A stretch of 64,000 nucleotides of DNA from Heterodontus francisci (lineage: Eukaryota), in NCBI RefSeq assembly GCF_036365525.1, contig NC_090374.1:14735168-14799167 (forward strand), read 5' to 3'. Under the pieces are notes generated by a model, which saw nothing but the letters and a program-made list of their open reading frames with translations, made no database searches and was not told the origin of the DNA. Every line of letters starts with the position of its first letter. The first letter of the stretch is position 1. Below, in pieces: positions 26,800 through 53,656 of the stretch. The position numbers were made by a program, and so were the translations under genes.

Positions 26800-26860
26800 A
26801 TGAGTTCTCTCTACGTTTGGCTTTCTGCTGTTCTGCTGTCGGTCTCGGTGCGGGGTTCCA
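26800..26860 (+). CDS. SIGLEC15-like: Siglec-15-like gene B, exon 1 (signal peptide MSSLYVWLSAVLLSVSVRGS, phase-1 donor)
   Basis: ATG at 26800 in ttggcaATGa context, 20 hydrophobic codons, donor A|gtaggt at 26861. Same exon is conserved in paralogous copies at 9266-9326 (-) and 58959-59019 (+). Phase matches the downstream V exon. Confidence 0.8.
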
Positions 26861-26935
26861 GTAGGTGCTTTCGAATAATAACTGTTCAAATTCATTTTGT
26901 TGCACAAATTGTCCTTTTTTATCATTTCGCTGCAG

Positions 26936-26947
26936 GGTCGCGAATGG
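26936..26947 (+). CDS. SIGLEC15-like: Siglec-15-like gene B, 12-nt micro-exon 2 (R-S-R-M)
   Basis: Pyrimidine tract + tgcag|GGTCGCGAATGG|gtgaaa, phase 1-1. The paralog has tacag|GATCACGAGTGG|gtaaaa (R-S-R-V) with synonymous changes, while the preceding intron differs in length (75 vs 79 nt). Confidence 0.65.
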
Positions 26948-28149
26948 GTGAAAATCCAGGGGAGGGACGGTCAGAGTCAGAGAAATAGTGAGGGGTAGAA
27001 TGAGCGTCAGGTTTCCAGTAAGACACAGGGATACTGTGGTTAACCGCTGTGTGACTGGGTGGGGAGGGTTAAGGGTGTTGGAGATATTCGGTGTGTCTGA
27101 AGGAGCTGAGGGCTGGTATAGGCAGTGTCAGTGTCTGGGAGACGTGATCATTCTCTCTCCCTTTCACTGTTTAAGTTGCCAGTGTAGAGTTCCATATGTA
27201 GAGCAATATTGCAGCCAGTGCCAAATTGGAACATCCAGACAAGGATTTACTTTCAGCGGGCATCACTATGTTGTGTTGCTTGAGTGTTTGTTGAGAGTTT
27301 AATTTCTGATTTCCCTTGTGCATGTCTGAGCTGCTTGGCTCATTGTTCTCCCATTCTCTTTAAGAGGTGAAAACTAACTTCCATCCACCCAACAGCATCC
27401 AGCAATCACCCAGCATCTCCTGCTTTTATTGATTGAAAGTCAAAGGGATGATTTTTGCCTGCTCCTTTAGGCGCTAAAGAGCCTCCGAGTTGGCCAAAGT
27501 CAGACCTATATGTCGTGATCCATGAAAGTTGCTTCTAATCAGTACTTGAGTGTTTAAGCTGCAGGAGTCTGTTCCAGCACATTCAGGCAAAGTTCAAATG
27601 ATGGTAATCAACAATTAGGATCAAGTTTACTTGCTAGAATCAGGGCAAAAAAATTAATTCACGCCAATTTTTGAGAGTGTGGCTGACGATTCATGGTGTG
27701 GCCCCACCCATTCAGATGTGGTGGGTCAGATATAAAATTCAACTATCATCTGAATGATTGTGACTCAAGTTCCTGCCCCCCACCCCAGGACTGGTCTCCT
27801 CTTCAGAAAGCTTCTGGCAAGCTCTGCACACAGCAGGAAGCCCTGGCAGTGTAGCTGGACACCACGTGGTGCAGGCAGCCTGATTTTTTCTTAAACGCAG
27901 GCTGCCTCTTAAAGGGAAGGTGGCAAAAAAGATTGCTGGAATGGAAATTCTTATAAACTGATCATCAGGGCACACAGAAGGATCCAGACTCAGGTATGTG
28001 ACAAGGGCAGCAAACACATGGGAACACCACCAACTGCAGGTTCCCCTCCAAGTCACACACCATCCTGACTTGAAACTATATTGCTGTTTCTTCACTGTCG
28101 CTGAGTCAAAATCCTGGAACTCCCTCCCTGACAGCACTTTGAGTGTACC

Positions 28150-28662
28150 TACATTGAGTACAAGAGTTGGGACGTCATGTTACAGTTGTACATAACGTTG
28201 GTTAGGCCACATTTGGAGTACTGTGTGCAGTTCTGGTCGCCGCACTACAGGAAAGATGTGATTAAGCTAGAGAGGGTGCAGAAAAGATTGACAAGGATGT
28301 TGCCTGGTTTGGAGGGCTTGAGTTATAAAGAGAGATTGGATAGGCTGGGTCTGTTTTCCCTGGAGCGAAGGAGGCTGAGAGGGGACATGATAGAAGTATA
28401 TAAAATTATGAGAGGCATAGATAGGGTAGATAGCCAGAGTCTGTTTCCCATGGTAGGGGTGACTAAAACTAGAGGGCATAGATTTAAGGTGAGAGGGAGG
28501 AGGTTTAAAGGGGATCAAAGGGGTAAATTTTTCACACAAAGAATAGTGGGTATCTGGAATGAGCTGCCTGAGGAGGAGGTGGAGGCAGGAACAGTAGCGA
28601 CATTTAAGAGGCATCTGGACAGGTACTTGAATGAACAAGGCAGGGAGGGATATGGAATTATG
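28150..28662 (+). mobile_element. CR1 3' ORF2 fragment
   Basis: ORF 28177-28665. Confidence 0.88.
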
Positions 28663-28830
28663 TAACAGCCCCGACAACCAATTTTTTCTGCAGCACCTCT
28701 GGAAGAGTCTGTCACTCTGGTTTTGGTCATTATAGCCACTCCAGACGTTGCTCCACAAACCACTGACCACCTTCAGGCATTGACCCATTGTCTCCCGAGA
28801 CAAGGAGGCCAAAGAAGAAGAAGAAGAAGA
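28662..28830 (+). mobile_element. RTE 3' end with (GAA)n tail
   Basis: cacaaaccactgaccacc..gacaaggaggccaaa(gaa)n. Confidence 0.85.
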
Positions 28831-31800
28831 TATATAAACTACCCAAAACCGTCAGTTATATTCCAAACTGTAACTCACTCTTCTTTATCCATTATTCTAT
28901 AAACTACCCAAACTCCTCTGTTATATTCTAGCCTGTAACTCACATTTATTTATCCATTATTCTATCGATAAACTACCCAAACCCCTCTGTTGTATTCCAG
29001 CCCTTAACTCACTGTTAATTATCCTTTATTCTATATGTAAACTACCCAAAGCCTTCTGTTATATTCCAGCCTGTAACTCGCTGTTATTTATCCATTATTC
29101 TATATATAAACTTCCGAAACTCTTCTATTCTATTCCAGCATGTAACTAACTGTTATTGATCCATTAATCTATATATTAACTAGCCAAATTCCTTGGTTAT
29201 ATTCCAGCCTGTAACTCTGTTCTTTATCCATTATTCTATATATAAGTGACCCAAACCCCTCTGTTATATTCCAGCCTGTAACTCACTGTTAAATATCCAT
29301 TATTCTATATATAAACTCCCCAAACCCTTCTATTATAACGTAACTAACTGTTATTGATCCATTAATCTATATATGTACTAGCCAAATTCCTTGGTTATAT
29401 TCCAGCCTGTAACTCTGTTCTTTATCCATTATTCTATATATAAGTGACCCAAACCCCTCTGTTATATTCCAGCCTGTAATTCACTGTTATTTATCCATTA
29501 TTCTATATATAGACTACCCAAACCCTTCTGTTATATTCAAGCTTGTAACTCACTGTTATTTATCCATTATTCTATATATAAACTACCCAAACCCCTCTGT
29601 TATATCCCAGCCTGCAACTCATTTTTATTTTTCCATTATTCTATATATAGACTACCCAAACCCTTCTGTTAGATTCCAGCCTGTAACTCACTGTTATTTA
29701 TCCATTATTCTATATATAATCTACCCCAATGCTTCAGTTATATTCCAGCATGTAATTCACTGTTATTTATCCATTATTCTACATATAAACTACCCAAACT
29801 CCTCTGTTATAGTCCAGCCTGTAACACATTGTTATTTATCCATTATTCTATATATAAACTACACAAAATGATCATTTATATTCCAAACTTTAACTCACTG
29901 TTATTTATCCATTACTCGATAAACTATCCAAACCCTTCTGTTAGATTCCAGCCTGTAACACACTGTTATTTATCCATTACTCTATAAACTACCCAAACCC
30001 TTCTGTTAGATTCCAGCCTGTAACTCACTGTTATTTATCTATAAACTACCCAAACCCTTCTGTTATATTGCAGCCTGTAACACACTGTTACTTTTCGATT
30101 AATTTATATATAAACTTTCAAAACCCCTGTTATATTCCAGCCTGTAACTCACATTTATTTATCCATTATTCTATATATGAACTACCCAAAACAGTCTGTT
30201 ATATTCCAAACTGTAACTCACTGTTCTTTCTCCATTATTCTGTAAACTTTCCAAACCCTTCTGTTATATTCCAGCCTGTAACTCTCTGTTAGTTAGCCAT
30301 TTTTCTATATATAAACTACCCAAAACAGTTTGTTGTATTCCAAACTATAACTCACTGTTCTTTATCCATTATTCTATTTGTAAACTACCCAAACCCTTCT
30401 GTTATATTGCAGCCTGTAACTCACTGTTATCGATCCATTATTCTATGTATAATCCATCCAAACTCCTTGGTTATATTCCAGCCTGTAATCACTGATATTT
30501 ATCCATTATTCTATATGGAAACTACCCAAACCCTTTTTATTTTTTTTATTTAAAGATAAAGCACTGAAACAGGCCCTTTGACCCACCGAGTCTGTGCCGA
30601 CCAACAACCACCCATTTATACTAACTCTACAGTAATCTCATATTCCCTACCTACACTAGGGGCAATTTACAACGGCCAATTTACCTATCACCTGCAAGTC
30701 TTAGGTATTGGGAGGAAACCGGAGCACCTGGCAAAAATCCACACGGTCACAGGGAGAACCTGCAAACTCCGCACAGGCAGTACCCAGAATCGAACCTGGG
30801 TTTCTGGAGCTGTGAGGCTGCAGTGCTAACCACTGCGCCACTGCGCCGCCCAATCCCCTGTTATATTCCACCTGTAACTCACTTATTTATCCATTATTCT
30901 AGATATAAACTACCCAAGCCCCTCTGTTATATTCCAGCCTGTAACTCACTGTTATTTATCTATTATTCTATACATAAACTAACCAAACCCTTCTATTATT
31001 TTACAGCCTGTGACTCACTGTTATTGATCCATTATTCTATATAGAAACTTCCCAAACTCCTCTGTTATATTCCAGCCTGTAACTCACTTTTGTTTACCCA
31101 ATATTCTATATATAGACTACCCAAACCCCTCTGTTATATTCCAGCTTGTAACTCACTGTTATTTATCCATTATTCTATATGGAAACTACCCAAACCCCTC
31201 TGTTATATACCAGCTTGTAACTCAGTTATTTATCCATTATTCTATATGTAAACTACCCAAACCCCTCTGTTATATTCCAGCCCATAACTCACTGTTATTT
31301 ATCCATTATTCTATATATAGACTACCCAAACCCCTCTGTTATATTCCAGCCCATAACTCACTGTTATTTATCCATTATTCTATATGTAAACTACGCAACC
31401 CCCTGTGTTATACCAGCCTGTAACTCACTGTTATTTATCCATTATTCTATATGTAAACTACGCAAACCCTCTGTTATATTCCAGCCCATAACTCACTGTT
31501 ATTTATCCATTATTCTATATGTAAACTACGCAAACCCCTCTGTTATATTCCAGCCCATAACTCACTGTTATTTATCCATTATTCTATATGTAAACTACGC
31601 AAACCCCTCTGTTATATTCCAGCCCATAACTCACTGTTATTTATCCATTATTCTATATGTAAACTACCCAAACCCCTCTGTTATATTCCAGCCCATAACT
31701 CACTGTTATTTATCCATTATTCTATATGTAAACTACGCAACCCCCTGTGTTATACCAGCCTGTAACTCACTGTTATTTATCCATTATTCTATATATAAAT

Positions 31801-34268: not shown

Positions 34269-34269
34269 C

Positions 34270-36802
34270 GGCTTTGGCCTCCTTACCTCGAGAGACAATG
34301 GGTAAGCGCCTGGAGGTGGTCAGTGGTTTGTGAAACAGCGCCTGAAGTGGCTATAAAGGCCAATTCTAGAGTGACGGGCTCTTCCACAGGTGTTGCAGAA
34401 AAATTTGTTTGTCGGGGCTGTTACACAGTTGGCTCTCCCCTTGCGCCTCTGTCTTTTTTCCTGCCAACTGCTAAGTCTCTTCGACTCGCCACACTTTATC
34501 CCCGCCTTTATGGCTGCCCGCCAGCTCTGGCGAACGCTGGCAACTGACTCCCATGACTTGTGATCAATGTCACAGGATTTCATGTCGCGTTTACAGACGT
34601 CTTTAAAGCGGAGACATGGATGGCCGGTGGGTCTGATACCAGTGGCGAGCGCGCTGTACAATGTGTCTTTGGGGATCCTGCCATCTTCCATGCGGCTCAC
34701 ATGGCCAAACCATCTCAAGCGCCGCTGACTCAGTAGTGTGTATAAGCTGGGGATGTTGGCCACCTCGAGGACTTCTGTGTTGGAGATATGGTCCTGCCAC
34801 CTGATGCCAAGTATTCTCCGGAGGCAGCGAAGATGGAATGAATTGAGACGTCGCTCTTGGCTGACATACGTTGTCCAGGCCTCGCTGCTGTAGAGCAAGG
34901 TACTGAGGACACAGGCTTGATACACTCGGACTTTTGTGTTCCATGTCAGTGCGCCATTTTCCCACACTCTCTTGGCCAGTCTGGACATAGCAGTGGAAGC
35001 CTTTCCCATGCGCTTGTTGATTTCTGCATCTAGAGACAGGTTACTGGTGATAGTTGAGCCTAGGTAGGTGAACTCTTGAACCACTTCCAGAGCGTGGTCG
35101 CCAATATTGATGGATGGAGCATTTCTGACGTCCTGCTCCATGATGTTCGTTTTCTTGAGGCTGATGGTTAGGCCAAATTCATTGCAGGCAGCCGCAAACC
35201 TGTCGATGAGACTCTGCAGGCACTCTTCAGTGTGAGATGTTAAAGCAGCATCGTCAGCAAAGAGGAGTTCCCTGATGAGGACTTTCCGTACTTTGGACTT
35301 CGCTCTTAGACGGGCAAGGTTGAACAACCTGCCCCCTGATCTTGTGTGGAGGAAAATTCCTTCTTCAGAAGACTTGAACGCATGTGAAAGCAGCAGGGAG
35401 AAGAAAATCCCAAAAAGTGTGGGTGCGAGAACACAGCCCTGTTTCACGCCACTCAGGATAGGAAAGGGGTCTGATGAGGAGCCACCATGTTGAATTGTGC
35501 CTTTCATATTGTCATGGAATGAGGTGATGATACTTAGTAGCTTTGGTGGACATCCGATCTTTTCTAGTAGTCTGAAGAGACCACGTCTGCTGACGAGGTC
35601 AAAGGCTTTGGTGAGATCAGTGAAAGCAATGTAGAGGGGCATCTGTTGTTCACGGCATTTCTCCTGTATCTGTCGAAGGGAGAACAGCATGTCAACGGTC
35701 GATCTCTCTGCACGAAAGCCATACAGTGCCTCAGGGTAGACGCGCTCGGCCAGCTTCTGGAGCCTGTTTAGAGCGACTCGAGCAAAGACTTTCCCCACTA
35801 TGCTGAGCAGGGAGATTCCACGGTAGTTGTTGCAGTCACCGCGGTCACCTTTGTTTTTATAGAGGGTAATGATATTGGCATTGTGCATGTCCTGAGGTAC
35901 TGCTCCCTCGTCCCAGCACAGGCATAGCAGATCATGTAGTGCTGAGAGTATAGCAGGCTTGGCACTCTTGATTATTTCAGGGGTAATGCTGTCCTTCCCA
36001 AGGGCTTTTCCGCTGGCTAGAGAATCAATGGCATCACTGAGATCCAATTTGGTTGGCTGTATGTCCAGCTCATCCATAACTGGTAGAGGCTGGGCTGCAT
36101 TGAGGGCAGTCTCAGTGACAACATTCACCCTGGAGTACAGTTCTAGGTAGTGCTCAACCCAGCGGTCCATTTGCTTGCGTTGGTCAGTGATTATGACCCC
36201 TGATTTAGATTTGAGGGGGGCAATCTTCTTGATGGTTGGCCCAAGAGCTCTCTTAATGCCATCATACATTCCTCTGATGTTTCCGGTGTCTGAGGCCAGC
36301 TGAATATGACTGCATAGGTGTTGCCAGTAGTCGTTTGCGCAGCGCCTGACTGTTCTTTGTGCAGTGCTTCTGGCTGCTTTAAGTGCTACGGATGTTAACT
36401 CGCTGGGGGCTTTCTTGTAGTTCAACAGTGCAATGCGCTTCGCGGTTATGACAGGTTCCAGCTCTTCATTATGAGATTGAAACCAGTCTGCATTTCTCTT
36501 CGCACTTTTGCCGTAGGTGGTCAAAGCTGACTAATAGATGGCGTCTCTGATATGGGCCCACTTGGTCTCAGCATCCCCTGTGGGAGTGTTTTGAAGGGTT
36601 GTTACAAGTGAATTTAGAAATTTTTGTAACAGCTGTGGGTGAGAAATTCTGCTCGTGTTGATGCGCGGGTGGCCCTTCTGCTTGGAATGATGCAACTTCT
36701 TTGGTCTGAGTCTAACCTTGCTGCACACCAGGGAGTGGTCGGTGTCGCAGTCCGCACTGTGGAAGCTGCGTGTGATTTGAACACTGTTTAAGGAGGTTCG
36801 CC
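34270..36802 (-). mobile_element. RTE-clade LINE, 5'-truncated; 734-aa ORF (34320-36524) with RT and C-terminal CxxC..H..C motif
   Basis: RT motifs DLTKAFD, GVKQGCVLAP, LFADD; CNTCGRARHSRIGLYSHFRRC. Confidence 0.93.
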
Positions 36803-36851
36803 TTTATTCTATATATAAACCACCCAAACCCCTCTGTTTTATTCCAGCCTG

Positions 36852-37245: not shown

Positions 37246-37454
37246 ATTCCAGCCTGTAACTCACTGTTATTTATCTATTATTCTACATATAACCAGCCAA
37301 ACCGTTCTGTTGTATTCCAGCCTGTAACTCACTCCAGTGACTGATGTCTGTGTATAAACCATCCCAATCTGACCATATGATGTTATATCTGTTGTCACGA
37401 GATCACAATCAGTATATTATCTCAGTTTGATTTTGAAACACTATTCTCTGTCCC

Positions 37455-37560
37455 TGTGGGTTCCGAAGAAGGGTCACTGACCCGAAACGTTAACTCTGCT
37501 TCTCTTTCCACAGATGCTGCCAGACCTGCTGAGTGAATCCAGCATTTCTTGTTTTTGTCT
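37455..37560 (+). mobile_element. Penelope-type pseudo-LTR fragment with a minimal hammerhead ribozyme motif
   Basis: gggtt-CCGAAGA-a-gggtc(act)gaccc-GAAA-cgt-t-aactc, then cacagatgctgccagacctgctgagt. Confidence 0.6.
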
Positions 37561-37602
37561 CCGTCCCTGTGCTGTTTTAATATTCTCTCTCTCTCTCCAC
37601 AG

Positions 37603-37995
37603 AGTTTTCTGAGAATGGTTGGACAATGAGCACTGCGGATGATGTGAGTGTTGAGGAAGGAGGGTCCGCTGTCTTGCCGTGTACTTTCACCCACCCACAC
37701 ACTGATCAGACGGTCACCGGCTCTGTGATATGGTACAACCGCGATTCATGGGATTCTAATGTTATTTTTAAGTGTACATATTCTGGTCCGGGCCATTCAC
37801 AGAGTGAGCTGTGTGAGGATGTGAAACAGCAGGACGGCGGGAATCGATTCAGATTCGTGGGGAACTTCCGTAACAAAGATGTCTCAATCATGATGGAGCG
37901 GCTGATCCGGGCGGACAGCGGTTATTATCGGTGTCGTGTGGAGCTCAATATTGGAAAGATTAATGTACTGAAACTAACGAGTCTGAGAGTGGAAG
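37603..37995 (+). CDS. SIGLEC15-like: Siglec-15-like gene B, V-set Ig domain 1 (sialic-acid-binding type)
   Basis: Acceptor (ct)n-ccacag|, donor G|gtgagg, phase 1-1. WTMSTADDVSVEEGGSAVLPCTFTHPH..IFKC..SELC..RFRFVGN..YYRCRVE matches recalled human Siglec-15 motifs (AVLPCTFTHPH, VFRC..SELC, YFCRVE): four Cys and the essential Arg (37935-37937). Confidence 0.92.
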
Positions 37996-39053
37996 GTGAG
38001 GAACAATATTCAGGGGCTGCAGCTGCCCCGATAGCTCAATGGCTAAAGACTCCACCTGGTCTGGTCCTGAACCACATGGGTAAATAAACTCTCAGCAATC
38101 CCGGGCTTTGAAAGGGGAATATTGCCCGGGATTCCTGCTCCTGATCACTCTCCAGACACTCCTGCTGGAAGGTGTCTTATTGGACATTGAATAAGACAAT
38201 GGGCCAGCCTGTGATGCTCTCCACAGTCAAATAGTCCATTGCCACTCATTGACCAGGCTTGTGCTGTAAGGAAGGCCATCTGGGTGAGATCAGTAATAAT
38301 ATTTTAGGATAATGAGCTATTTCAGTTTGGACATTGGGTAAGTGCAGCATGTCCATCTCAGTCTCAGTGCTGTAGGCCTGCAGTGTCCAGCTCAAAGCTG
38401 ATTGGACCTGTTCCACCACTTCATATATTCTCAGTGGAGAATTGGCGGGTGGATCACAGGGAGACGATGTCAATTGGGTCATTGCTGCTCAGCTCACACT
38501 TCAGGGCAGTACCGAGGGAGTGCTGCACTGGCTGAGGTGCCACTTTAACCTTCCTCCAGTGTTGCCCCTCAAATCGATTGAATCGTCTGGGCATTTCTGG
38601 GACCAATGGGAAATGATATTTAACCGAGACAAATGCAGTGTGATGCGGGTAGGTAGGATCAACACGGAATTCACTGAACATTTACAGGGAATAATACAGA
38701 AAGTGGCTGAGAGAGAAAAGGATCGAGACTGTTAATGTACACACATCACTCAAAATTCACAACCAATGCAGTGAAGCCATTGACAAAACAAACAGGGCAT
38801 TGGGTTGTATTAACAAAACCATTCAGTACAAGTCAAACCACTTCCCACTTTCTGCTAGTCTGAGAAACGTCCCTGACCTCTTACCCTCTGTTTCCTGTTT
38901 TGTCACCATCTTTCAATCTGTTCTGCTACCCGGCCTCCTGAGCCCACAATCCCTGGGATCTCCACTGGCTGAGTACTACACTGGGCAATGCCTCTACCTA
39001 CTGGACCACAGGGAGAGCTCAGAACTGAAATAAATTAAAGTTCTCATCAAGAC

Positions 39054-39260
39054 CTGGATTTTGCTGCCTCACTGTGTGGTGGAGGGAGGTTCAATTGAAA
39101 CATTTAAAAGGGAATTAGATTGAAATAAAGGAAGAATGTGCAGGGTTTTGGGGAGAAGGCGGGGGGAATAGCAGGAAGTGAATTGCTCTTTCGGTGAGCC
39201 GGTGCAGACATGTTGGGCTGAATGGTCTCCTTCTGCAGTGTAACAATTCTGTGATCTGTG
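39054..39260 (+). mobile_element. Short CR1 3'-end insertion with AAGAC target duplication
   Basis: Absent from the paralogous intron near 14903. aagac at 39049-39053 and 39261-39265. Confidence 0.8.
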
Positions 39261-39298
39261 AAGACACTGATCCATTCTAATGTCTGTCCTTTCCTCAG

Positions 39299-39649
39299 CT
39301 GCTAGTGGAAATGTCTCAGTGGTGACTGGGACCGAGGGAGCTTCAGTTACATTGCCCTGTATGTTCACACCCAGGAGTTACCGCACCCTGTCCACTGTTA
39401 CATGGATGAGGAAGGAGCCCTACCAACACATAGTCACATTTAGAAACCAATCAAATGGATCTTGGACAACTGCAAATGGTGGAAATCGGTACGAACTCAT
39501 CGGGAATCCAAAGGAGGGAAACGCCTCAACCAGGATAAACCAGCTGAGTGTGAATGACAATCACACTTACCTGTGTCTGGTGGAATACACATTACGGTCC
39601 AATTATCAACATCTGATCCAGACTGAGACACAGCTGCAGGTTGTACATG
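39299..39649 (+). CDS. SIGLEC15-like: Siglec-15-like gene B, V-set Ig domain 2 (no essential Arg, 5 N-glycosylation sequons)
   Basis: Acceptor ctttcctcag|, donor G|gtaaga, phase 1-1. V-set motifs SVTLPC, VTW, RYELIGNPKEGNAS, D-x-x-TYLC. No stops. Confidence 0.9.
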
Positions 39650-39727
39650 GTAAGAAACCATTCCCACATTCTCCAGTGTATAGGGGTTGTACAGTGAGGG
39701 TGAGCGGTGTAATATAAAACACTCATC

Positions 39728-40030
39728 AGCTGTGGCTCAGTGGTTATCATTCTCACCTCTGAGTCAGTCGGTTGTGGGTTCAAGACACTCCAATGCAATA
39801 CTGATGGAATGTGACACTGTTTAAGGTACTGTGTATGAGAAGAGATATTAAAGTAAGGCCTTATCTGGAAGAGTATGGGAGTTGACCTAATGTCCTGGTC
39901 AATATTTATCTCTGAACCAACATCATCAAACCATAGTCTGATAATTATCTCATTGCTGTTTATGGGATCTTGCTGTGTGCAAATTATCTGCTGTGTATCC
40001 TGCATTAAAACAGTGACTACACTTCAAAAA
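39728..40030 (+). mobile_element. DeuSINE (SacSINE-like) copy
   Basis: tRNA head tgtggctcagtggt..gggttcaag; Deu-like core cattgctgtttatgggatcttgctgtgtgcaaat. Confidence 0.6.
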
Positions 40031-40254
40031 CAAAGTTCTGTCATTCACTGACTTCCTGGCTGACCTGCATCTTAACTCCATTTAATGAACTTGTTTTAAT
40101 GAGGGAGAACTGGGTTTTGATTTATGGGGCACTGGCACCTGTACTGGGGAATGTGGGAGCTGTACCGTTGGCACGGTCTTCATCTGAACCATGTTGGGAC
40201 CAGTGTTCTGTCGAGTCATATAACTAGGGCAGTAGAGAGGGCTTTTACACTAAA

Positions 40255-42945
40255 AGGAAGGATAAATGAGAATGGACAGAGACTGCTTGAGTTGTGTACC
40301 TATCATAACCTCTGCATCACCAACTTGTTCTTTCACACTAAACCCTGTCACCAGGTTTCTTGGAGGCACCCAAGATCACGTCGTTGGCACCAGCTGGACC
40401 TCATCGTCACAAGGCGAGCCTCTCTAAACAGCGTTCAAATCACACGCAGCTTCCACAGTGCGGACTGCGACACCGACCACTCCCTGGTGTGCAGCAAAGT
40501 TAGACTCAAACCAAAAAAGCTGCATCACTCCAAGCAGTAGGGCCGCCCGCGCATCAACACGAGCAGAATTTCTTATCCACAGCTGTTACATAAGTTTCTA
40601 AATTCACTTGAAAAAGCCCTTCAAAACACTCCCTCAGGGGATGCAGAGACCAAGTGGGCCCACATCAGAGACACCATCTATGACTCAGCAATGACCACCT
40701 ATGGCAAACGTGTGAAGCAGAATGCAGACTGGTTTCAATCTCACTTTGAAGAGCTGGAACCTGTCATAGCCGCTAAGTGCATTGCACTGCTGAACGACAA
40801 GAAAGCCCCCAGCGAGTTAACATCCGTAGCACTTAAAGCAGCCAGAAGCACTGCACAAAGAACAGTCAGGCGCTGCACAAATGACTACTGGCAACACCTA
40901 TGCAGTCATATTCAGCTGGCCTCTGACACCGGAAACATCAGAGGAATGTTTGATGGCATTAAGAGAGCTTTTGGGCCAACCATCAAGAAGATCGCCCCCC
41001 CTCAAATCTAAATCAGGGGACACAATCACTGACCAAGGCAAGCAAATGGACCGCTGGGTTGAGCACTACCGAGAGCTGTACTCCAGGGAAAATGTTGTCA
41101 CTGAGACCATCCTCAATGCAGCCCAGTCTCTGCCAGTCATGGATGAGCTGGATGTACAGCCATCAAAATCGGAACTCAGTGATGCCATTGATCCTTTAGC
41201 CAACGGAAAAGCCCCTGGGAAGGACGGCATTACCCCTGAAATAATCAAGAGTGCCAAGACTGCTATACTTTCAGCACTGTACAAACTGCTTTGCCTGTGC
41301 TGGGATGAGGGAGCAGTACCACATGACATGCGCAATGCCAATATCATCAACCTCTGTAAGAACAAAGGTGACCGCGGTGAATGCAACAACTACTGTGAAA
41401 TCTCCCTGCTCAGCATAGTGGGTAAAGTCTTCGCTCGAGTTGCTTTAAACAGGCTCCAGAAGCTGGCTGAGCGTGTCTACCCTGAGGCACAGTGTGGTTT
41501 TCGAGCAGAGAGATCCACCATTGACATGCTGTTCTCCCTTCGTCAGATACAGGAGAAATGCCGTGAACAACAGATGCCCCTCTACGTTGCTGTCATTGAT
41601 CTCACCAAAGCCTTTGACCTCATCAGCAGACGTGGTCTCTTCAGACTACTAGAAAAGATCGGATGTCCACCAAAGCTACTAAATATCATCACCTCATTCC
41701 ATGACAATATGAAAGGCACAATTCAGCATAGCGGCGCCTCATCAGACCCCTTTCCTATCCTGAGTGGCGTGAAACAGGGCTGTGTTCTCGCACCCACACT
41801 GTTTGAGATCTTCTTCTCCCTGCTGCTCTCTCATGTGTTCAAGTCTTCAGAAGAAGGAATTTTCCTCCACGCAAGATCAGATGGCAGGTTGTTCAACCTT
41901 GCCCGTCTAAGAGCGAAGACCAAAGTACAGAAAGTCCTCATCAGGGAACTCCTCTTTGCTGACGATGCTGCTTTAACATCTCACACGGAAGAGTGCCTGC
42001 AGAGTTTCATTGACAGGTTTGCGGCTGCCTGCAATGAATTTGGCCTAACCATCAGCCTCAAGAAAACGAACATCATGGGACAGGACGTCAGAAATGCTCC
42101 ATCCATCAATATCAGTGACCATGCTCTGGAAGTGGTTCAAGAGTTCACCTAGCTGGGCTCAACTATCACCAGTAACCTGTCTCTGGATGCAGAAATCAAC
42201 AAGCGCATGGGAAAGGCTTCCACTGCTATGTCCAGACTGGCCAAGAGAGTGTGGGAAAATGGCGCACTGACACGGAACACAAAAGTCCGAGTGTATCAAG
42301 CCTGTATCCTCAGTACCTTGCTCTACAGCAGCGAGGCCTGGACAAAGTATGTCAGCCAAGAGCGACGTCTCAATTCATTCCATCTTCACTGCCTCCGGAG
42401 AATCCTTGGCATCAGGTGGCAGGACCGTATCTCCAACACAGAAGTGTTCGAGGCGGCCAACATCCCCAGCTTGTACACACTACTGAGTCAGCGGTACTTG
42501 AGATGGCTTGGCCATGTGAGCCGCATGGAAGATGGCAGGATCCCAAAGGACACATTGTACAGCGAGCTCGTCACTGGTATCAGACCCACCAGCTGTCCAT
42601 GTCTCCGCTTTAAAGACGTCTGCAAACGCGACATGACGTCCTGTGACATTATTCACAAGTCGTGGGAGTCAGTTGCCAGTGATCGCCAGAGCTGGCGGGC
42701 AGCCATAAAGGCGGGGTAAAGCGTGGCGAGTCGAAGATACTGAGCAGTTGGCCGGAAAAAGAACAGAAGCGCAAGGGGAGAGCCAACTGTGTAACAGCCC
42801 TGACAACCAATTTTATCTGCAGCGCCTGTGGAAGAGTCTGTCACTCTAGAATTGGCCTTTATAGCCACTCCAGGCGCTGCTCCACAAACCACTGACCACC
42901 TCCAGGCGCTTACCCATTGTCTCTCGAGACAAGTAGGCCAAAGAG
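40255..42945 (+). mobile_element. RTE-clade LINE, 5'-truncated, with stops and frameshifts
   Basis: ORFs 40124-40540, 40691-41011, 40881-42152, 42207-42719. Confidence 0.92.
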
Positions 42946-42959
42946 TGGGGGGAAGAGAT

Positions 42960-45832
42960 CATGTGAGAGGAGATGTGGTAAATCAAATGAAAACGATAAG
43001 GTAATCGAGCAGAGTGGCGAATTAAGTAGTGATAACCAGAGTGCGGCAAGCTTAAGAGTGTACCAGCAGAGAAGACCAGAGATGGCAGAAATGGTATAAA
43101 GAGAGAGTTAAAGGCGCTGTATCTGAATGCACACAGCATTCGTAATGAACAGTTGCTACACTGTATGACAGAGTATACAGGAAGAAATAAATGGGGCCTG
43201 TAAGAAAGGTACTGCAATCACATGGGTGATTTTAATCTATATAGATTGGACGAATCAGATTGGCAAATGTTGCTTGAAAAATGAGTTCACAGAGTGTATT
43301 TCGGACAATTTCACAGAGCAGTACGTTCTGGAACCAACTAGGGAGCATGCTATTCTAGACCTGGTAATGTGCAATGAGACAGGATTGGTCATTAACCTCA
43401 TGGTAAAGGAGCCTCTAGGTGACAGTGATTATAACATGAGAGAATTTCACATTCAGTTTGAAGGGGAGATGTGTGGGCCTAAGACGAGTGTTTAAACCTA
43501 AATAAAGGTAAATACAAGAGTATGCCAGCAAAAAATATAAAATCAGACTGTAAAAGCTTCTACAGGTACGTAAAAAGGAAAAAGACAAATGTGGGTCCAT
43601 TACAGGCAGAGTAAGGACAATTTATAATGGGAATAGAGAAATGGCAGAGAAGCTAAATAATTATTTTGTGTCTGTCTTCCCTGAGGAAGATATAAGAAAT
43701 TTCCCAGAATTAGAGATCCAAGGGGTTAGGGGGAATGAGGAATTGAAGGAAATTAGTATTAGTAAGAAGATTGTATTGGAGAAATTAATGGGGCTGAAGG
43801 TTGATAAGTCCCCGGGACCTGATATTCTACATCCCAGAGTGTTTAAAAAGGTAGCTATGGAGATAGTGGATGCATTGGTGATCATCTTCCAAAATTCTAT
43901 AGATTCTGGAGCAATTCCTGCAGATTGGAAGGTTGCAAATGTCATCCCACTATTTAAGAAGGGAGGGAGAGAAAACAGGGAATTACAGACCTGTTAGCCT
44001 TACATCGGTCATTGGGAAAATGCTAGAATCTATTCTAAAGGATGTGATAAATGGACACTTGGATAATAATGATCTGATTGGGCATAGTCAACATGGATTT
44101 ATGAATGGGAAATCATGTTTGATGAACCTGTTGAAGTTTTTTGAGGATGTTACTAACAGAATTGATAAAGCAGAGTGGTATACCTGGATTTTCAGAAGGC
44201 TTTTGATAAAGTCCCCCACAGGAGGTTGTTTAGCAAAATTAAAGCACATGGGATAGGAGGTAATCTACTGGCATGGATTTCTTTCTTTTTCTTTTTCTTT
44301 TGGGCCTCCTTATCTCGAGAGACAATGGATACGCGCCTGGAGGTGGTCAGTGGTTTGTGAAGCAGCGCCTGGAGTGGCTATAAAGGCCAATTCTGGAGTG
44401 ACAGGCTCTTCCACAGGTGCTGCAGAGAAATTTGTTTGTTGGGGCTGTTGCACAGTTGGCTCTCCCCTTGCGCCTCTGTCTTTTTTCCTGCCAACTACTA
44501 AGTCTCTTCGACTCGCCACAATTTAGCCCTGTCTTTATGGCTGCCCGCCAGCTCTGGCGAATGCTGGCAACTGACTCCCACGACTTGTGATCAATGTCAC
44601 ACGATTTCATGTCGCGTTTGCAGACGTCTTTATAACGGAGACATGGACGGCCGGTGGGTCTGATACCAGTGGCGAGCTCGCTGTACAATGTGTCTTTGGG
44701 GATCCTGCCATCTTCCATGCGGCTCACATGGCCAAGCCATCTCAAGCGCCGCTGACTCAGTAGTGTGTATAAGCTGGGGGTGTTGGCCGCTTCAAGGACT
44801 TCTGTGTTGGAGATATAGTCCTGCCACCTGATGCCAAGTATTCTCCGAAGGCAGCGAAGATGGAATGAATTGAGACGTCGCTCTTGTCTGGCATACGTTG
44901 TCCAGGCCTCGCTGCCGTAGAGCAAGGTACTGAGGACACAGGCCTGATACACTCGGACTTTTGTGTTCCGTGTCAGTGCGCCATTTTCCCACACTCTCTT
45001 GGCCAGTCTGGACATAGCAGTGGAAGCCTTACCCATGCGCTTGTTGATTTCTGCATCTAGAGACAGGTTACTGGTGATAGTTGAGCCTAGGTAGGTGAAC
45101 TCTTGAACCACTTCCAGAGCGTGGTCGCCAATATTGATGGATGGAGCATTTCTGACATCCTGCCCCATGATGTTCGTTTTCTTGAGGCTGATGGTTAGGC
45201 CAAATTCATTGCAGGCAGACGCAAACCTGTCGATGAGACTCTGCAGGCATTCTTCAGTGTGAGATGTTAAAGCAGCATCGTCAGCAAAGAGGAGTTCTCT
45301 GATGAGGACTTTCCGTACTTTGGACTTGGCTCTTAGACGGGCAAGGTTGAACAACCTGCCCCCTGATCTTGTGTGGAGGAAAATTCCTTCTTCAGAGGAT
45401 TTGAACGCATGTGAAAGCAGCAGGGAGAAGAAAATCCCAAAAAGTGTGAAAAAAACTAATTGAAACCTACAAAATACTTAAAGGGATAGACAGAGTAGAT
45501 GCAGCCATGATGTTTCCCCTGGGTGAGGAGTCTCGAACCAGGGGACACAATTTCAAAATAAGCGGGAAGCCACTTAGGACAGAAATGAGGAGAGATTTCT
45601 TTACTCAGAGGGTTGTGAATCGTTGGAATTCTCTACCCCAGAGGGCTGTGGAAGCTCAGTCATTGAGTGTGTTTAAAGCAGAGATTGACAGATTTCTAAA
45701 TACCAATGACATAAGGGGATATGGGGATAATGTGGGAAAAATGCATTGAAGTGGATGATCAGCCATGATCATCTTGAATGGCAGGGCAGGCTGGATGGGC
45801 TGAATGGCCTACTCCTGCTCCTATGTTCCTAT
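42960..45832 (+). mobile_element. Degenerate CR1 (42960-44280 and 45455-45832) split by an antisense RTE
   Basis: [34 protein letters not shown]; 3' tail cctatgttcctatg. Confidence 0.85.
44281..45450 (-). mobile_element. RTE 3' portion (335-aa open frame)
   Basis: ORF 44347-45354. Confidence 0.92.
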
Positions 45833-48200: not shown

Positions 48201-48418
48201 AGAACAAAAGAAATAGCAGCAGGAATAGACCATGTGACCCGTCAAGCCTGCTCCGCCATTCAATATGATCATGGCTGATCTTGGGCTTCAATTCCACTTT
48301 CCCGCCCAGCCTCAGTCTCAGCCTTAAATATATTCAGTGATGGAGCATCCGCAACCCTCTGGGGTAGAGAATTCCAAAGATTCACAACCCCTTGAGTGAA
48401 GTAATTTCTCATCTCAGT

Positions 48419-49257: not shown

Positions 49258-49286
49258 CAGTCCTTATCCTGAGACTGTGCCCCTGT

Positions 49287-50306: not shown

Positions 50307-50690
50307 TCTTGTTTTAGATTCCCCGCATGGCGGAAACAATCTCTCAGTGTCTACCCGATCCAGAACTTTCAGAATCATGTACATTTCAATGAGATGCCTC
50401 ACATTTTTCGAAACTCCAGAGAATGTAGTCCCAATTTACACAGCCTTTCATCATAGGACAACCCCCTCATCCCAGGGACCAATTTAGTGAACCTTCGCTG
50501 CAACCTCTCCAATGCAAGTATATCCTTTTTTAAATGTGGAGACCAAAAATGCACACAGTGTTCCAGATGTGGTCTCACCAAATCCCTGTACAATTATAGC
50601 AAGACTTCTTTATTCCTGTACTCCAATCCCCTTGCAATAAAGGCCAACATGCCATTTGCCTTCCTAACTGCTTGCTGTACCTGCATGCTA
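50307..50690 (-). mobile_element. CR1 3' fragment (continues at 48200-48418)
   Basis: ORF 50399-50593 RPHLEHCVHFWSP. Confidence 0.8.
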
Positions 50691-50804
50691 TCTTTTTATG
50701 CTCGAAGGGTGACAGTATTAAACCTTTTCATTGTAAATACAACAGTATTAACTTGTCACTGTAAATACTACTGTATTAATCCCTGTCACTGTAAGTTTTT
50801 TTAT

Positions 50805-51097
50805 TAGAGTCATAGAAAGATACAGCACCGAAACAGGCCCTTCGGCCCACCGAGTCAGCACCGACCATCAACCACCCATTTATACTTATCCTACATTAAC
50901 CCCATATTCCCTCTCACATCCCTACCTTCCCTCAATTCTCCTAACATCTACCTACACTGGAGGCAATTTTACAATGGCCAATTTACCTATCAACCCTCAA
51001 GTCTTTGGCTGTGGGAGGAAACCGGAGCACCCGGAGGAAGCCCACACGGTCACAGGGAGAACTTGCAAACTCCGCACAGGCAGTACCCAGAATTGAA
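50805..51097 (-). mobile_element. V-SINE, 5'-truncated
   Basis: Same family as 6478-6829. Confidence 0.85.
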
Positions 51098-51324
51098 TTT
51101 CTACAGGATTAATCCCTGTCAGTGTAAGGAACTATATTATTCATACACTCCAATTGCCATTTTCATTCACAGTCCATACTCTTCGCTTAATTGAGGTCCA
51201 TCACGATATTTCTGTCCTGCAATCGAGATTCACAATTATCCACAGACTTTGATTAATTGTCTCTGCATTGTTGGTCTCTCACCTTTGCTTGTCTCTAATT
51301 TGATTTCTTTCTCTTTCTGTTCAG

Positions 51325-51424
51325 CTGCAGAGACTTTCCCCATTGCGATATTGTGCATTCCACTTGGAGTGAAACTCCTCGCCCTTATAGTGATGTGGAT
51401 TATTTTGTTGAGGGATAAATCCAG
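51325..51424 (+). CDS. SIGLEC15-like: Siglec-15-like gene B, transmembrane exon with intramembrane Lys (AAETFPIAILCIPLGVKLLALIVMWIILLRDKS)
   Basis: Acceptor tttctctttctgttcag|, donor AG|gtatgt. Phase 1 in frame with V2. About 23 hydrophobic residues with LGVKLL resembling Siglec-15 LGFKAL, followed by a basic stop-transfer. Confidence 0.85.
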
Positions 51425-52377
51425 GTATGTAATATTGCTGGGAGACTCTTGTCTTTAAATGCCTGAAGCTTGATTCATGGGTGAGCTTTGGTGGTGATTC
51501 AAACACTTGAGCCATTCTGGTCGATGAACAACCACACAGTGCATGTCCAGCAGAGGTCGCTGGATCCCAGCAGGATCAGGAACTCTGGGCAATGTTTCCT
51601 TTCCCTATCCCAGTAGCTCTTGGACCAATTGGAGAGCCCCGACTGCAGCCCAGCTGGGATTGGCTAACTCAGCCCAGACATGGGATGGAAACTGGCCCCT
51701 TCCTGGTCTGTATGATTCAGCTCCTCACAGCAGGAACTTGCTGAGCTATCGGGGACCTGATTAAATCTCCCAGACCACCTGTATTCACTATTGTCTATTT
51801 TAATCTGCAAGGTTAAGCCCTCAGGGCATATTATGGTTCAAAACTGATTGAGTTGAATTTGATTGCAGTGCTGGGTTATTGACAGTCAGATTCCTGTTCA
51901 CTTTCCAACCTCAGTCTTCCCCCAAGGCTTTCTGGAAAACACCAACCACTCACCTCAAGACCCGGAAAAAGAATAAAACACTCTGGGGATTGGCTGCTGT
52001 TCAGATGATGAGAATGATGGTTATCACAGTGTTGAAAATGATTTGCAGTTCCCTTTGACTCAGTTTTTGGTCACCTGTCCTCATATCTCCTCATGTGACT
52101 CGGTGTTCCATTTTGCCTGATTGTGTTCCTGTGAAGCACATGTTAAAAGTGCTATATAAATGCAAGTTTTTGTTCTTGCTATATAAACAAAGTGACTCCT
52201 GACATCGCAGCGGTCTGCTGACATAATCAGAGCGCTCCAAGCTGTGAACATGTGCAAACGGTCGCCTGCGCTGAGATGCTGCACATACTCAGCCTACGTC
52301 TTGCCAGGACTAACTGGTGCATGCGAAGGAAAACATTCTCCCCCCTCGCCCACTCACTCCCCACTCCTCGCTTCCAG

Positions 52378-52840
52378 CCACCCTGCTCTCCAGCTGCTCA
52401 CTCCCCTCTTCCGCCCACCATCCTGCTCTCCAGCTGCTCACTCCCCTCTTCCGCCCACCATCCTGCTCTCCAGCTGCTCACTCCCCTCTTCCGCCCACCA
52501 TCCTGCTCTCCAGCTGCTCACTCCCCTCTTCCGCCCACCATCCTGCTCTCCAGCTGCTCACTCCCCTCTTCCGCCCACCATCCTGCTCTCCAGCTGCTCA
52601 CTCCCCTCTTCCGCCCACCATCCTGCTCTCCAGCTGCTCACTCCCCTCTTCCGCCCACCATCCTGCTCTCCAGCTGCTCACTCCCCTCTTCCGCCCACCA
52701 TCCTGCTCTCCAGCTGCTCACTCCCCTCTTCCGCCCACCATCCTGCTCTCCGGCCGCTCACACCTCGCTTTCGTCCTCCCCCATCCTGCTCTCCGGCTTC
52801 TCAGTCCCCTCTTCCTCCCACCATCCCACTCTCCGGCCGC
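52378..52840. repeat. 40-bp tandem repeat (ccaccatcctgctctccagctgctcactcccctcttccgc), about 11 copies, followed by inverted copies at 52841-52995
   Basis: Directly visible. Confidence 0.95.
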
Positions 52841-53640
52841 TCGGGGAGTGAGCAGCCGGAGAGCAGGATGGTGGGGGGGGGAAGTGGGGAGTGTGCAGCC
52901 GGAGAGTGGGATGGGGGGGGGGAAGCGGGGAGTGAGCGGCCGGAGAGCAGGATGGGGGGTGAAGCGGGAAGTGAGTGAGCGGACAGCGGGATGGCACTGA
53001 AACCTCACTGAATTACGGAGGGTGTGCAGCACTGTCAGAGGTGCTGTCCTTCTGAGAAAGTTTAAACAGTGCAACGTTCTCCGAGTATCAACCAAAACAT
53101 GTCCATTGTCTGCTGTCATGTTTGCTTATGAAATGACAGTCACTGCTCCTAAAGTAATTCACTTTAGGTGAATTAAGATGACTAGCTACTAAATAACTGG
53201 CGCATGCGCAGGAGGGAGGGGAGACTGTTGGGGGTGGGATGGCGGTGGCAGCATAACAATATTTGAGTGGATCTTTGGGTTGAAGTTGTTTATCTGTGAT
53301 AAACAGATAAACCATCATTAATCCTGGCAGCTGCCTGAACGTCGCAGACACTGATGTTACAGTGGAACAGGCTGCATTTTCGCATGTGCTAGTACTGCGC
53401 CACCTGATGGTTGCGTTGTCAGCAAACGTCGCCCTTTATAAATGCAAGTTGTTGTTCTTGCTGAAAACAGGAACAACAATCAGACCCATTGTGTCAGTGT
53501 TTAACACTGATAATCTAATCTGTTTTTAAATACATGGGGAATCCTATGTAAACAGCTGCAGGTTGTATATGGCGGTTCTGAAAATGCTCTTATTTTACTG
53601 TTAATATGGCTCATTTTATTTAATCTTGTTTTGTCCCCAG

Positions 53641-53656
53641 AAAGGAGCAGGACTGA
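53641..53656 (+). CDS. SIGLEC15-like: Probable terminal coding exon (R-K-E-Q-D-stop if spliced directly to the TM exon), followed by 3' UTR
   Basis: Strong acceptor tcttgttttgtccccag|. Downstream 53766-54067 is homologous to 59205-59340 in the pseudogene copy. An alternative acceptor near 51915 would give SLPQGFLENTNHSPQDPEKE*. Confidence 0.45.

What the first reader, a model, noticed from the sequence alone, without database searches (positions are those of the whole stretch)
26800..53656. Siglec-15-like activating receptor with a non-canonical tandem V-V ectodomain
Seen: five exons spread over about 25 kb of repeats join in frame with canonical GT-AG sites (phases 1-1-1-1-2), giving signal peptide, V1, V2, TM and a short tail (about 310 aa with the probable terminal exon). 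Known: Siglec-15 is V-set + C2-set with a TM Lys that binds DAP12. Seen: no C2-set exon lies between V2 and the TM exon; that interval is almost all transposon. Inference: this is a lineage-specific Siglec-15-derived receptor in which a second V domain replaces C2. I do not know whether it has been described.
Basis: partly seen in the sequence, partly recalled or inferred. Interest (0 to 1): 0.9.

Follow-up and report, generated by a model that had tools for sequence, protein, structure and literature searches.

The report
Horn shark Siglec-15-like V-V activating receptor
This is a real, transcribed horn-shark immune-receptor gene that NCBI already lists as "Siglec-15", and it is one member of a large family of paired activating and inhibitory receptors in sharks and rays that kept an old second V domain and lost the C2 domain.

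Summary
The gene is real. The translations of four exons (signal peptide, V1, V2, transmembrane with Lys) and of the terminal exon tile exactly onto two Heterodontus francisci RefSeq proteins. These are "sialic acid-binding Ig-like lectin 15" isoform X1 (XP_067885291.1, 320 aa) and isoform X2 (XP_067885293.1, 306 aa).

RNA-like contigs from four runs show exon-restricted depth and the exact V1/V2 junction. Seven C2 probes find no C2 exon, and the V2-TM intron is full of LINE remains.

V1 is Siglec-15-like: the best solved-structure match is human Siglec-15 at E 5e-18, and the CRVEL arginine and four Cys are kept. The TM carries the Siglec-15 PLGxK motif.

"V2 replaces C2" is wrong. Chimaera, sharks and rays, including H. 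francisci itself (P0302), also have V1-V2-C2-TM(Lys) genes. Domain trees make V1 and V2 of the two architectures sister groups, so V2 is older and C2 was lost later.

The V-V form is an elasmobranch-wide multigene family. It has Lys-TM members and ITIM-tailed members whose ectodomains cluster by species. The scan has flagged this architecture at many other loci of this genome. I found no paper on it. The architecture is a new variant of a known kind; the gene itself is already annotated. Moderate interest.

The parts
26800..26860 (+). Coding exon 1: start codon and signal peptide MSSLYVWLSAVLLSVSVRGS. It ends in phase 1 with donor GTAGGT.
   Evidence: It is identical to residues 1-20 of RefSeq P0196 and P0267.
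37603..37995 (+). V1 exon (393 nt, phase 1-1). It encodes a Siglec-15-type V-set domain with the CRVEL arginine (Arg132 of the protein) and four Cys.
   Evidence: RNA-like contigs cover this exon but not its flanks.
39299..39649 (+). V2 exon (351 nt, phase 1-1). It encodes an arginine-less V-set domain (CLVEY) that carries all five N-glycosylation sequons of the protein.
   Evidence: The splice joint 37995/39299 (GT..AG) is seen in contigs of all four runs.
51325..51424 (+). Transmembrane exon (100 nt, phase 1 in, phase 2 out). The helix AILCIPLGVKLLALIVMWIILL carries Lys285 in the Siglec-15 PLGxK motif.
   Evidence: The AlphaFold model has a helix at residues 274-305.
53641..53702 (+). Terminal coding exon with two acceptors 4 nt apart. 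Starting at 53641 the tail is RKEQD* (stop 53654-53656, isoform X2, 306 aa). Starting at 53645 the tail is RSRTDPSQEAEKLNVQTAI* (stop 53700-53702, isoform X1, 320 aa).

Best explanation
The locus is a five-coding-exon gene of the horn shark Heterodontus francisci for a type I membrane glycoprotein. Its layout is signal peptide, V1, V2, a transmembrane helix with a central lysine, and a very short tail.

It is an activating-type member of a Siglec-15-related V1-V2 receptor family that is present throughout sharks, skates and rays. The family descends from a cartilaginous-fish V1-V2-C2-TM(Lys) gene that is collinear with Siglec-15 and still exists in the same species. The V-V lineage lost the C2 exon, which is frame-neutral because Ig exons are phase 1-1. 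It then multiplied into clusters that contain both Lys-TM (activating) and ITIM-tailed (inhibitory) genes with near-identical ectodomains, that is, paired receptors.

Inferred mechanism:
- V1 binds a sialylated glycan through Arg132, the equivalent of human Siglec-15 R143.
- The heavily glycosylated V2 serves as the membrane-proximal spacer in place of C2.
- Lys285 pairs with the transmembrane aspartate of DAP12 or DAP10, which then signals through its ITAM or YINM motif.

Shown here: the gene structure, the domain identities, the conserved residues, the V1-V2 splicing in transcripts and the family relationships. Inferred and not tested: ligand, adaptor and cell type.
For: - Gene model: the exon translations tile RefSeq XP_067885291.1 exactly, and isoform X2 XP_067885293.1 ends RKEQD.
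- Transcription: the four runs show exon-restricted depth and the GT..AG joint at 37995/39299. One 103-nt contig crosses the joint with no mismatch.
- Domain type: both domains pass Pfam V-set. The AlphaFold model has mean pLDDT 82.9, and its best fold matches are tandem V-V proteins such as JAML, pIgR and VCBP3.
- V1 kinship: E 5e-18 to human Siglec-15 with all four Cys and CRVE aligned, and 38% identity to bird Siglec-15 V.
- TM kinship: the lysine sits in the same (P)LGxK context as in lungfish, frog, bird, mammal and teleost Siglec-15. Lysine to alanine abolishes DAP10/12 binding, and R143A abolishes sialic-acid binding, in mammalian Siglec-15 (as summarised in PMC7226832).
- No C2 exon in the window.
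- V-V-C2-TM(Lys) relatives exist, including H. francisci P0302. P0302 aligns collinearly with the window protein over V1+V2 (35% over 268 aa, E 5e-40) and then continues into C2. Callorhinchus P0029 aligns to 7ZOZ in V1 and in C2+TM, with V2 as an insert.
- Domain tree: the V2 clade has support 100/99 and the V1 clade 97/90, and each splits into a V-V group and a V-V-C2 group.
- Family composition: of 60 representatives, 31 have the TM Lys and 19 have an uncharged TM with ITIM tails. Activating and inhibitory ectodomains cluster by species; the eight H. francisci rows form a clade at 100/98.
Against: - No binding or signalling data exist for any member.
- The runs are only guessed to be RNA. 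Some contigs laid on V2 come from paralogues: a loose end after 39649 continues with a different sequence, which I read as the start of an inhibitory paralogue's TM exon. Locus-specific expression and the SP-V1, V2-TM and TM-tail junctions therefore rest on RefSeq's automated models, not on reads I saw.
- The backbone of the V-domain tree is unresolved. Monophyly of cartilaginous-fish V1 with canonical Siglec-15 V is merely not rejected (p-AU 0.40).
- About a third of family members have lost the arginine, so sialic-acid binding is not a family constant.
- I did not check whether a shark DAP12 exists.
Confidence: 0.8

Rival explanations
1. One reading: this is the shark's Siglec-15 orthologue, a single lineage-specific gene in which a duplicated V domain took the place of C2.
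For: V1 and the TM are clearly Siglec-15-like. V2 also matches the Siglec-15 V domain best (E 6e-9; E 5e-15 to bird Siglec-15 V). NCBI names the gene Siglec-15.
Against: H. francisci has a separate V1-V2-C2-TM(Lys) gene on a chromosome record of the same length, 212,062,168 bases (P0302). P0302 is the form collinear with Siglec-15. V2 is shared with V-V-C2 genes as far out as the chimaera. The V-V form has many copies per genome.
Confidence: 0.07
2. The protein is a receptor with a Siglec fold that no longer acts as a lectin. V1 would recognise a protein or pathogen ligand, and the arginine is only an ancestral leftover.
For: The arginine is replaced in 19 of 60 family representatives, and also in the H. 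francisci, Cetorhinus and Mobula V-V-C2 proteins. As reported in PMC7226832, cloned zebrafish Siglec-15 bound the tested glycans poorly. V1 differs more than V2 between H. francisci paralogues (88% against 97%), as expected of a fast-evolving ligand face.
Against: This gene keeps the full YxCRVEL motif and all four Cys. All 19 inhibitory representatives keep the arginine, which suggests constraint.
Confidence: 0.2
3. The main product is a secreted decoy rather than a membrane receptor. Skipping the TM exon would join V2 in frame to the 19-residue tail.
For: TM-less V-V models ending in the same tail exist in Heptranchias (P0005) and Pristiophorus (P0210). That reading frame of the terminal exon is conserved between species.
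Against: Both RefSeq isoforms of this gene include the TM exon. No skipping read was seen, but the reads I laid did not cover that junction.
Confidence: 0.08
4. The gene is silent or a pseudogene copy, and all the transcripts come from paralogues.
For: Paralogue cross-mapping is evident. The window also holds decayed pieces: a signal-peptide exon copy with a GT-to-GA donor at 58959-59019 and a V2 fragment at 14919-15020.
Against: All reading frames and all splice sites are intact. Mismatch-free contigs lie on V1, on V2 and on the joint (table 8).
Confidence: 0.04

Closest known systems
Siglec-15 of bony vertebrates (human structure 7ZOZ; V-set + C2-set + TM Lys; pairs with DAP12/DAP10)
   Same: The N-terminal V domain is 38-42% identical, with the same four Cys and the Y-x-C-R-V-E-L arginine. 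The transmembrane lysine sits in the same PLGxK context. The tail is short and has no ITIM.
   Different: There is a second V domain and no C2. It belongs to a multigene family with inhibitory twins, whereas bony-vertebrate Siglec-15 is classed among the highly conserved Siglecs (PMC7226832). It is not the form collinear with Siglec-15 in its own genome.
Cartilaginous-fish V1-V2-C2-TM(Lys) genes (H. francisci P0302, Callorhinchus P0029, Mobula P0050, Heptranchias P0026), which RefSeq calls Siglec-15, Siglec-12 or uncharacterized
   Same: The same V1 and V2 types in the same order, with sister clades for both domains, and the same kind of Lys-bearing TM helix (LCLIPLVK against LCIPLGVK).
   Different: They keep the C2 exon. 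Several of them, including P0302, have lost the V1 arginine, which the window gene keeps.
Mammalian paired Siglecs (Siglec-5/14, Siglec-11/16) and PILR alpha/beta
   Same: Activating (charged TM, short tail) and inhibitory (ITIM tail) genes lie in clusters with near-identical ectodomains that group by species, the usual sign of gene conversion or recent duplication.
   Different: The Ig lineage is different (Siglec-15-derived, not CD33-related) and so is the domain make-up. The parallel is one of organisation, not of descent. What I say about the mammalian pairs comes from my own knowledge, not from a test here.
JAML (AMICA1), a tandem V-V receptor
   Same: It is the best Foldseek match to the two-domain model (E 8e-17). 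NCBI names some family members "junctional adhesion molecule-like".
   Different: Identity is only 17%. The match reflects the shared V-V fold, not kinship, and JAML has neither the Siglec motifs nor a TM lysine of this kind.

Membership tests
Siglec-15 | An N-terminal V-set domain closest in sequence to the Siglec-15 V domain | tested here: met
   phmmer against PDB gives Siglec-15 at E 5e-18, with CD33 next at 5e-5. BLASTP to bird Siglec-15 gives 38% identity, E 6e-24. Monophyly with canonical Siglec-15 V is not rejected but also not shown (p-AU 0.40).
Siglec-15 | The essential F-strand arginine (human R143) for sialic-acid binding | tested here: met
   CRVEL aligns with human CRVEF, and the motif is shared with lungfish, frog, bird, mammal and teleost. 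This tests presence of the residue only. Binding was not tested.
Siglec-15 | The four conserved cysteines of the V domain | tested here: met
   LPC, FKC, ELC and YRC align with human LPC, FRC, ELC and YFC. All four are invariant or nearly invariant in the family alignment.
Siglec-15 | A single C2-set domain between the V domain and the membrane | tested here: not met
   No C2 exon was found with seven probes. The RefSeq protein goes from V2 straight to the TM, and the second domain is V-set.
Siglec-15 | A transmembrane lysine that recruits DAP12 or DAP10 | tested here: met
   Lys285 lies in the PLGVK context, at the position conserved in Siglec-15 TMs. The association itself cannot be tested with these tools.
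Siglec-15 | One-to-one orthology or synteny with SIGLEC15 | tested here: inconclusive
   A V-V-C2-TM(Lys) gene collinear with Siglec-15 (P0302) exists in the same species, on a record of the same length. The V-V genes form a separate sister clade with many copies.
Paired activating/inhibitory receptor family | Clustered genes with near-identical ectodomains but opposite signalling modules (charged TM with a short tail against ITIM tails) | tested here: met
   H. francisci P0211, P0205 and P0228 (uncharged TM; tails with VxYxxV) are 86-91% identical to the window's V1 and V2 exons. Activating and inhibitory rows intermix inside species clades. The counts are 31 Lys-TM against 19 uncharged-TM among 60 representatives.

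The most novel reading that the evidence does not exclude
In sharks and rays the Siglec-15 lineage, which bony vertebrates keep as one of the conserved Siglecs, became the fast-evolving paired-receptor family. That would make it the functional counterpart of the mammalian CD33-related Siglecs. The supporting signs are V-V ectodomains homogenised between activating and inhibitory genes within each species, and loss of the sialic-acid arginine only in non-inhibitory members (all 19 inhibitory representatives keep it; 16 of 31 activating ones do). This would be an independent replay of the host-pathogen dynamics proposed for primate Siglecs.
Probability: 0.4. Interest if true: 0.65.

Novelty: new variant of a known kind. 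Interest (0 to 1): 0.45.

Why it matters
Siglec-15 is treated as one of the "conserved" Siglecs, with a fixed V-C2-TM(Lys) layout from fish to man, and it is a drug target in bone disease and cancer.

The cartilaginous-fish data show that this layout is not universal:
- The oldest jawed-vertebrate branch carries V-V-C2 genes.
- In elasmobranchs there is also a C2-less V-V offshoot that expanded into activating and inhibitory pairs.

This gives comparative immunologists a second, independent system for studying how paired lectin-type receptors evolve. It also shows that automated names such as "Siglec-15", "sialoadhesin-like", "JAML-like" and "pIgR-like" are being scattered over a single family.

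The individual gene in this window adds little, because it is already an annotated RefSeq model.

Tried and rejected
- Micro-exon 26936-26947: rejected. It is absent from both RefSeq isoforms and from every homologue.
- Hidden C2 exon: searched with seven C2 probes at E up to 50 and word size 2. Nothing was found.
- tblastn hits at 13729-13911 and 18561-18785 (minus strand) to the C-terminus of Narcine isoforms looked like ITIM-tail exons. They are a transposon ORF (CSSCRMWEV...; the ORF 17850-18791 also has a GDSL-lipase/OSK-like domain) that has been drawn into the Narcine gene model.
- The C-terminal half of P0034, which matches 43247-43492 at 99%, is likewise read-through into a repeat.
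- Arginine loss against activating status: a phylogenetically controlled test gave only 6 independent pairs, of which 2 showed the trend and none the opposite. It has no power (p 0.5), so this stays a lead.
- Literature searches (Siglec-15 or siglec with shark, cartilaginous fish, Callorhinchus, elasmobranch; DAP12 with shark or cartilaginous) found no description of this family or of a shark DAP12.
Exons were searched one by one by reference. Full-length work used the database proteins P0196 and P0267, which the tools returned.
- Complex prediction was not used because no shark DAP12 sequence was at hand.
- The N blocks (56020-57257) were left alone.
Full report
**What is in the sequence**

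Its exons are:
- Exon 1 (26800-26860): starts with ATG and encodes MSSLYVWLSAVLLSVSVRGS.
- V1 exon (37603-37995): 131 codons.
- V2 exon (39299-39649): 117 codons.
- TM exon (51325-51424): encodes AETFPIAILCIPLGVKLLALIVMWIILLRDKS.
- Terminal exon (from 53641): supplies RKEQD and a stop.

Every intron begins GT and ends AG, and the phases are 1, 1, 1 and 2. Both Ig exons pass the Pfam V-set threshold, at 50.3 and 60.8 bits against a cutoff of 26.

**The gene is already annotated**

A HMMER scan of 1.84 billion representatives with V1 and a word-indexed search led to Heterodontus francisci RefSeq proteins. The five exon translations are exact substrings of P0196 (XP_067885291.1, "sialic acid-binding Ig-like lectin 15 isoform X1", 320 aa). 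They lie at residues 1-20, 22-151, 153-268, 270-301 and 303-320, and the junction codons give K21, A152, A269 and R302. The window is therefore horn-shark DNA and the gene is a public model.

The two isoforms differ only in the last acceptor. CAG|A at 53640/53641 gives RKEQD*. AAG|G at 53644/53645 shifts the frame to RSRTDPSQEAEKLNVQTAI*.

Exons were searched by reference, and the full-length analyses used P0196 and P0267 as returned by the tools.

**The micro-exon**

It is absent from both RefSeq isoforms. All homologues from sharks, skates and rays have the 20-residue signal peptide, one junction residue and then the V1 start (...GWTM...). I treat it as spurious.

**Transcript evidence**

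One read-laying run was allowed, and I spent it on 37300-39900. The four runs, from one sample, are recorded only as "RNA?". Even so, their contigs cover the two exons and not the intron. In run X1 the depth is in the hundreds to about 1,600 over the exons, against 0 to 55 over most of the intron. The last roughly 170 bases before V2 (39127-39300) are also deep. All four runs contain the joint 37995/39299 with GT..AG ends. In three runs (X1-X3) the same 103-nt contig crosses the joint, with no mismatch over its listed piece.

Some contigs laid on V2 are from paralogues. A 593-nt contig has 25 differences. A loose end after 39649 continues AGAAACAGACTGCCCCCAGC..., which I read as the start of an inhibitory paralogue's TM exon. 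V1-V2 splicing in this family is therefore shown. Locus-specific expression and the other junctions rest on the RefSeq models.

**No C2 exon**

C2 segments from Callorhinchus, Mobula, Heptranchias, lungfish, mammal, bird and a teleost were run by tblastn against the whole window at a very loose threshold. The best hit anywhere is E 0.096, outside the gene, and nothing credible lies between V2 and the TM exon. That 11.7-kb intron contains LINE reverse-transcriptase ORFs (40881-42152 on +, 44347-45354 on -) and a 922-nt inverted LINE pair.

**Kinship with Siglec-15**

Against all PDB sequences, V1 hits human Siglec-15 (7ZOZ) at E 5e-18. The next family, CD33, is at 5e-5. The alignment lines up LPCTFTHPH, all four cysteines and CRVE(L/F), the strand that carries human R143. 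V1 is 38% identical to bird Siglec-15 V.

V2 also matches the Siglec-15 V domain best (E 6e-9; E 5e-15 to bird), but it has Leu where the arginine should be. V2 also carries all five N-glycosylation sequons of the protein.

The TM lysine sits in IPLGVK-LLAL. The same (P)LGxK context is seen in lungfish, frog, bird, mammal and teleost Siglec-15. The functional meaning of R143 and of the TM lysine in mammalian Siglec-15 is summarised in PMC7226832.

An AlphaFold model built on a 60-sequence family alignment has mean pLDDT 82.9. It shows two beta-sandwich domains and a helix at residues 274-305. Its best Foldseek matches are tandem V-V proteins: JAML, pIgR and VCBP3.

**Why "V2 replaces C2" is wrong**

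The HMMER hit list contains cartilaginous-fish proteins with V1, V2, a C2 domain and a Lys-bearing TM:
- Callorhinchus P0029
- Mobula P0050

Heptranchias P0026 has the same V1-V2-C2 ectodomain but an uncharged TM.

A search with P0026 added Cetorhinus, Mustelus, Pristis, Rhincodon and others. It also added H. francisci P0302 (401 aa), which lies on a record of the same length (212,062,168 bases) as the window's gene.

Three pairwise comparisons place these forms relative to each other:
- P0302 aligns collinearly with the window protein through V1 and V2 (35% over 268 aa, E 5e-40). It then continues into C2 exactly where the window protein enters its TM segment.
- P0302 aligns with bird Siglec-15 through C2 and the TM.
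- P0029 aligns with 7ZOZ in V1 and again in C2+TM, with V2 as an insert between them.

In a maximum-likelihood tree of 79 V domains, all V2 domains form one clade (support 100/99). That clade splits into V2 of the V-V genes (96/99) and V2 of the V-V-C2 genes (97/95). The V1 domains do the same (97/90, splitting at 100/100 and 98/90).

The simplest history has three steps:
1. A Siglec-15-type V exon was duplicated before chimaeras and elasmobranchs split.
2. The resulting V1-V2-C2 gene was duplicated.
3. One copy lost C2 and then multiplied.

The tree also shows independent V duplications in lungfish, gar, salamanders and a characiform, so a V-V layout in Siglec-15 relatives is not rare. The deep backbone is unresolved. 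Holding all Siglec-15-like V1 domains together costs 2.7 log-likelihood units (p-AU 0.40), which is compatible with the grouping but is not proof.

**The family**

The V-V architecture occurs in at least 20 elasmobranch species, under a scatter of automated names. Among 60 representatives:
- 31 have the TM lysine and tails like RDKSRKEQD.
- 19 have an uncharged TM and long tails ending in VxYxxV motifs.
- Some lack a TM altogether.

On an ectodomain tree, activating and inhibitory forms intermix within species clades. The eight H. francisci rows group at 100/98, and the signalling type changes at least 10 times on the tree. That is the pattern of paired receptors kept alike by recent duplication or gene conversion.

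The scan's own notes list more than ten loci of this genome flagged as Siglec-15-like V-V receptors. Two are Lys-TM copies, 7.8 kb upstream and 142 kb downstream of this window. Two are uncharged-TM copies, 1.07 and 1.18 Mb upstream. A further note records a V-V-C2 locus 411 kb downstream. These are unchecked AI notes, but they agree with the RefSeq proteins I examined.

**Mechanism and confidence**

Structure, residues and relationships are shown. The following are inferences from mammalian Siglec-15:
- V1 binds sialoglycans through Arg132.
- V2 is a glycosylated spacer.
- Lys285 recruits DAP12 or DAP10.

I give the identity and history of the gene about 0.8, and the lectin and DAP12 steps about 0.5 each.

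**Novelty**

No paper in the searchable library describes Siglec-15 relatives of cartilaginous fish. The fish Siglec paper does not mention them. The gene is a public automated model, so the object itself is known. The architecture history and the paired family appear to be undescribed. I class it as a new variant of a known kind, of moderate interest.

**Limits**

- Only one read-laying run was available.
- The N blocks at 56020-57257 were not touched.

Noticed in passing
window 9267-9326 (-): This is a second signal-peptide exon on the opposite strand. It encodes MSSLYVWLSTVLLSVSVRGY, which matches the N-terminus of the H. francisci paralogue P0269/P0272 (XP_067885299.1 and XP_067885300.1, also named Siglec-15). 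The two Lys-TM genes therefore sit head to head about 17.5 kb apart, and the rest of the neighbour lies before the window start.
   Followed up: partly
window 58959-59019 (+): This is a third copy of the signal-peptide exon (MGSLYVWLSAVLLSVSVRSY). The donor GT has become GA, and no V exon follows within the window. It is either a decayed first exon or one that uses another donor.
   Followed up: no
window 14919-15020 (+): An isolated fragment matches the first 30 or so residues of V2 (62-71% identity to shark V2 domains). It lies between the two head-to-head genes and is probably a relic of a lost copy.
   Followed up: no
window 53641-53702 (+): The terminal exon is read in two frames, and both are conserved in other species. 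The frame RKEQD*SIAGG matches the skate and ray tails KREDGSIAGS and RKEEDRSITGS. The frame RSRTDPSQEAEKLNVQTAI matches the C-termini of TM-less V-V models in Heptranchias (P0005) and Pristiophorus (P0210). Skipping the 100-nt TM exon would put V2 in frame with the long tail and give a soluble form.
   Followed up: partly
family alignment A1 (60 proteins); Arg132 of P0267 = window 37935-37937: All 19 inhibitory representatives keep the V1 arginine, but only 16 of 31 Lys-TM representatives do. The tree needs 9 changes of the arginine state. After allowing for relatedness there are too few independent pairs to test this (6 pairs: 2 with the trend, 0 against; p 0.5).
   Followed up: partly
P0302, P0301, P0050 (V-V-C2 proteins of H. 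francisci, Cetorhinus, Mobula): The genes collinear with Siglec-15 have Leu in place of the V1 arginine in these three species (ICLVDL, ICLVNL, TCLVEL). Callorhinchus, Heptranchias and Mustelus keep Arg. In the horn shark, the C2-less family is therefore the one that retains the canonical sialic-acid residue.
   Followed up: no
window 17850-18791 (-) and 13729-13911 (-); Narcine P0014 residues ~480-555: This transposon ORF has a CSSCRMWEV... N-terminus and a GDSL-lipase/OSK-like domain. It matches the C-terminal 75 residues of several Narcine bancroftii RefSeq isoforms of this family at 51%. Those isoforms probably end in an exonised or mis-annotated repeat.
   Followed up: partly
window 37387-37560: A stretch of about 170 bases just upstream of the V1 exon has contig depth of 10^4 to 10^5 or more in all four runs, against 10^2 to 10^3 on the exons, with many loose ends. 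It is a very abundant repeat, possibly an expressed SINE. A second, weaker pile lies at 39127-39300, just before V2.
   Followed up: no
window 1396-4350 (-), 6685-8103 (+), 15620-16960 (-), 34320-36524 (-), 40881-42152 (+), 41795-42716 / 44527-45448: The window is dominated by LINE remains with reverse transcriptase, and with an endonuclease in the 984-aa ORF. One pair is an inverted repeat of 922 nt at 93% inside the V2-TM intron.
   Followed up: partly
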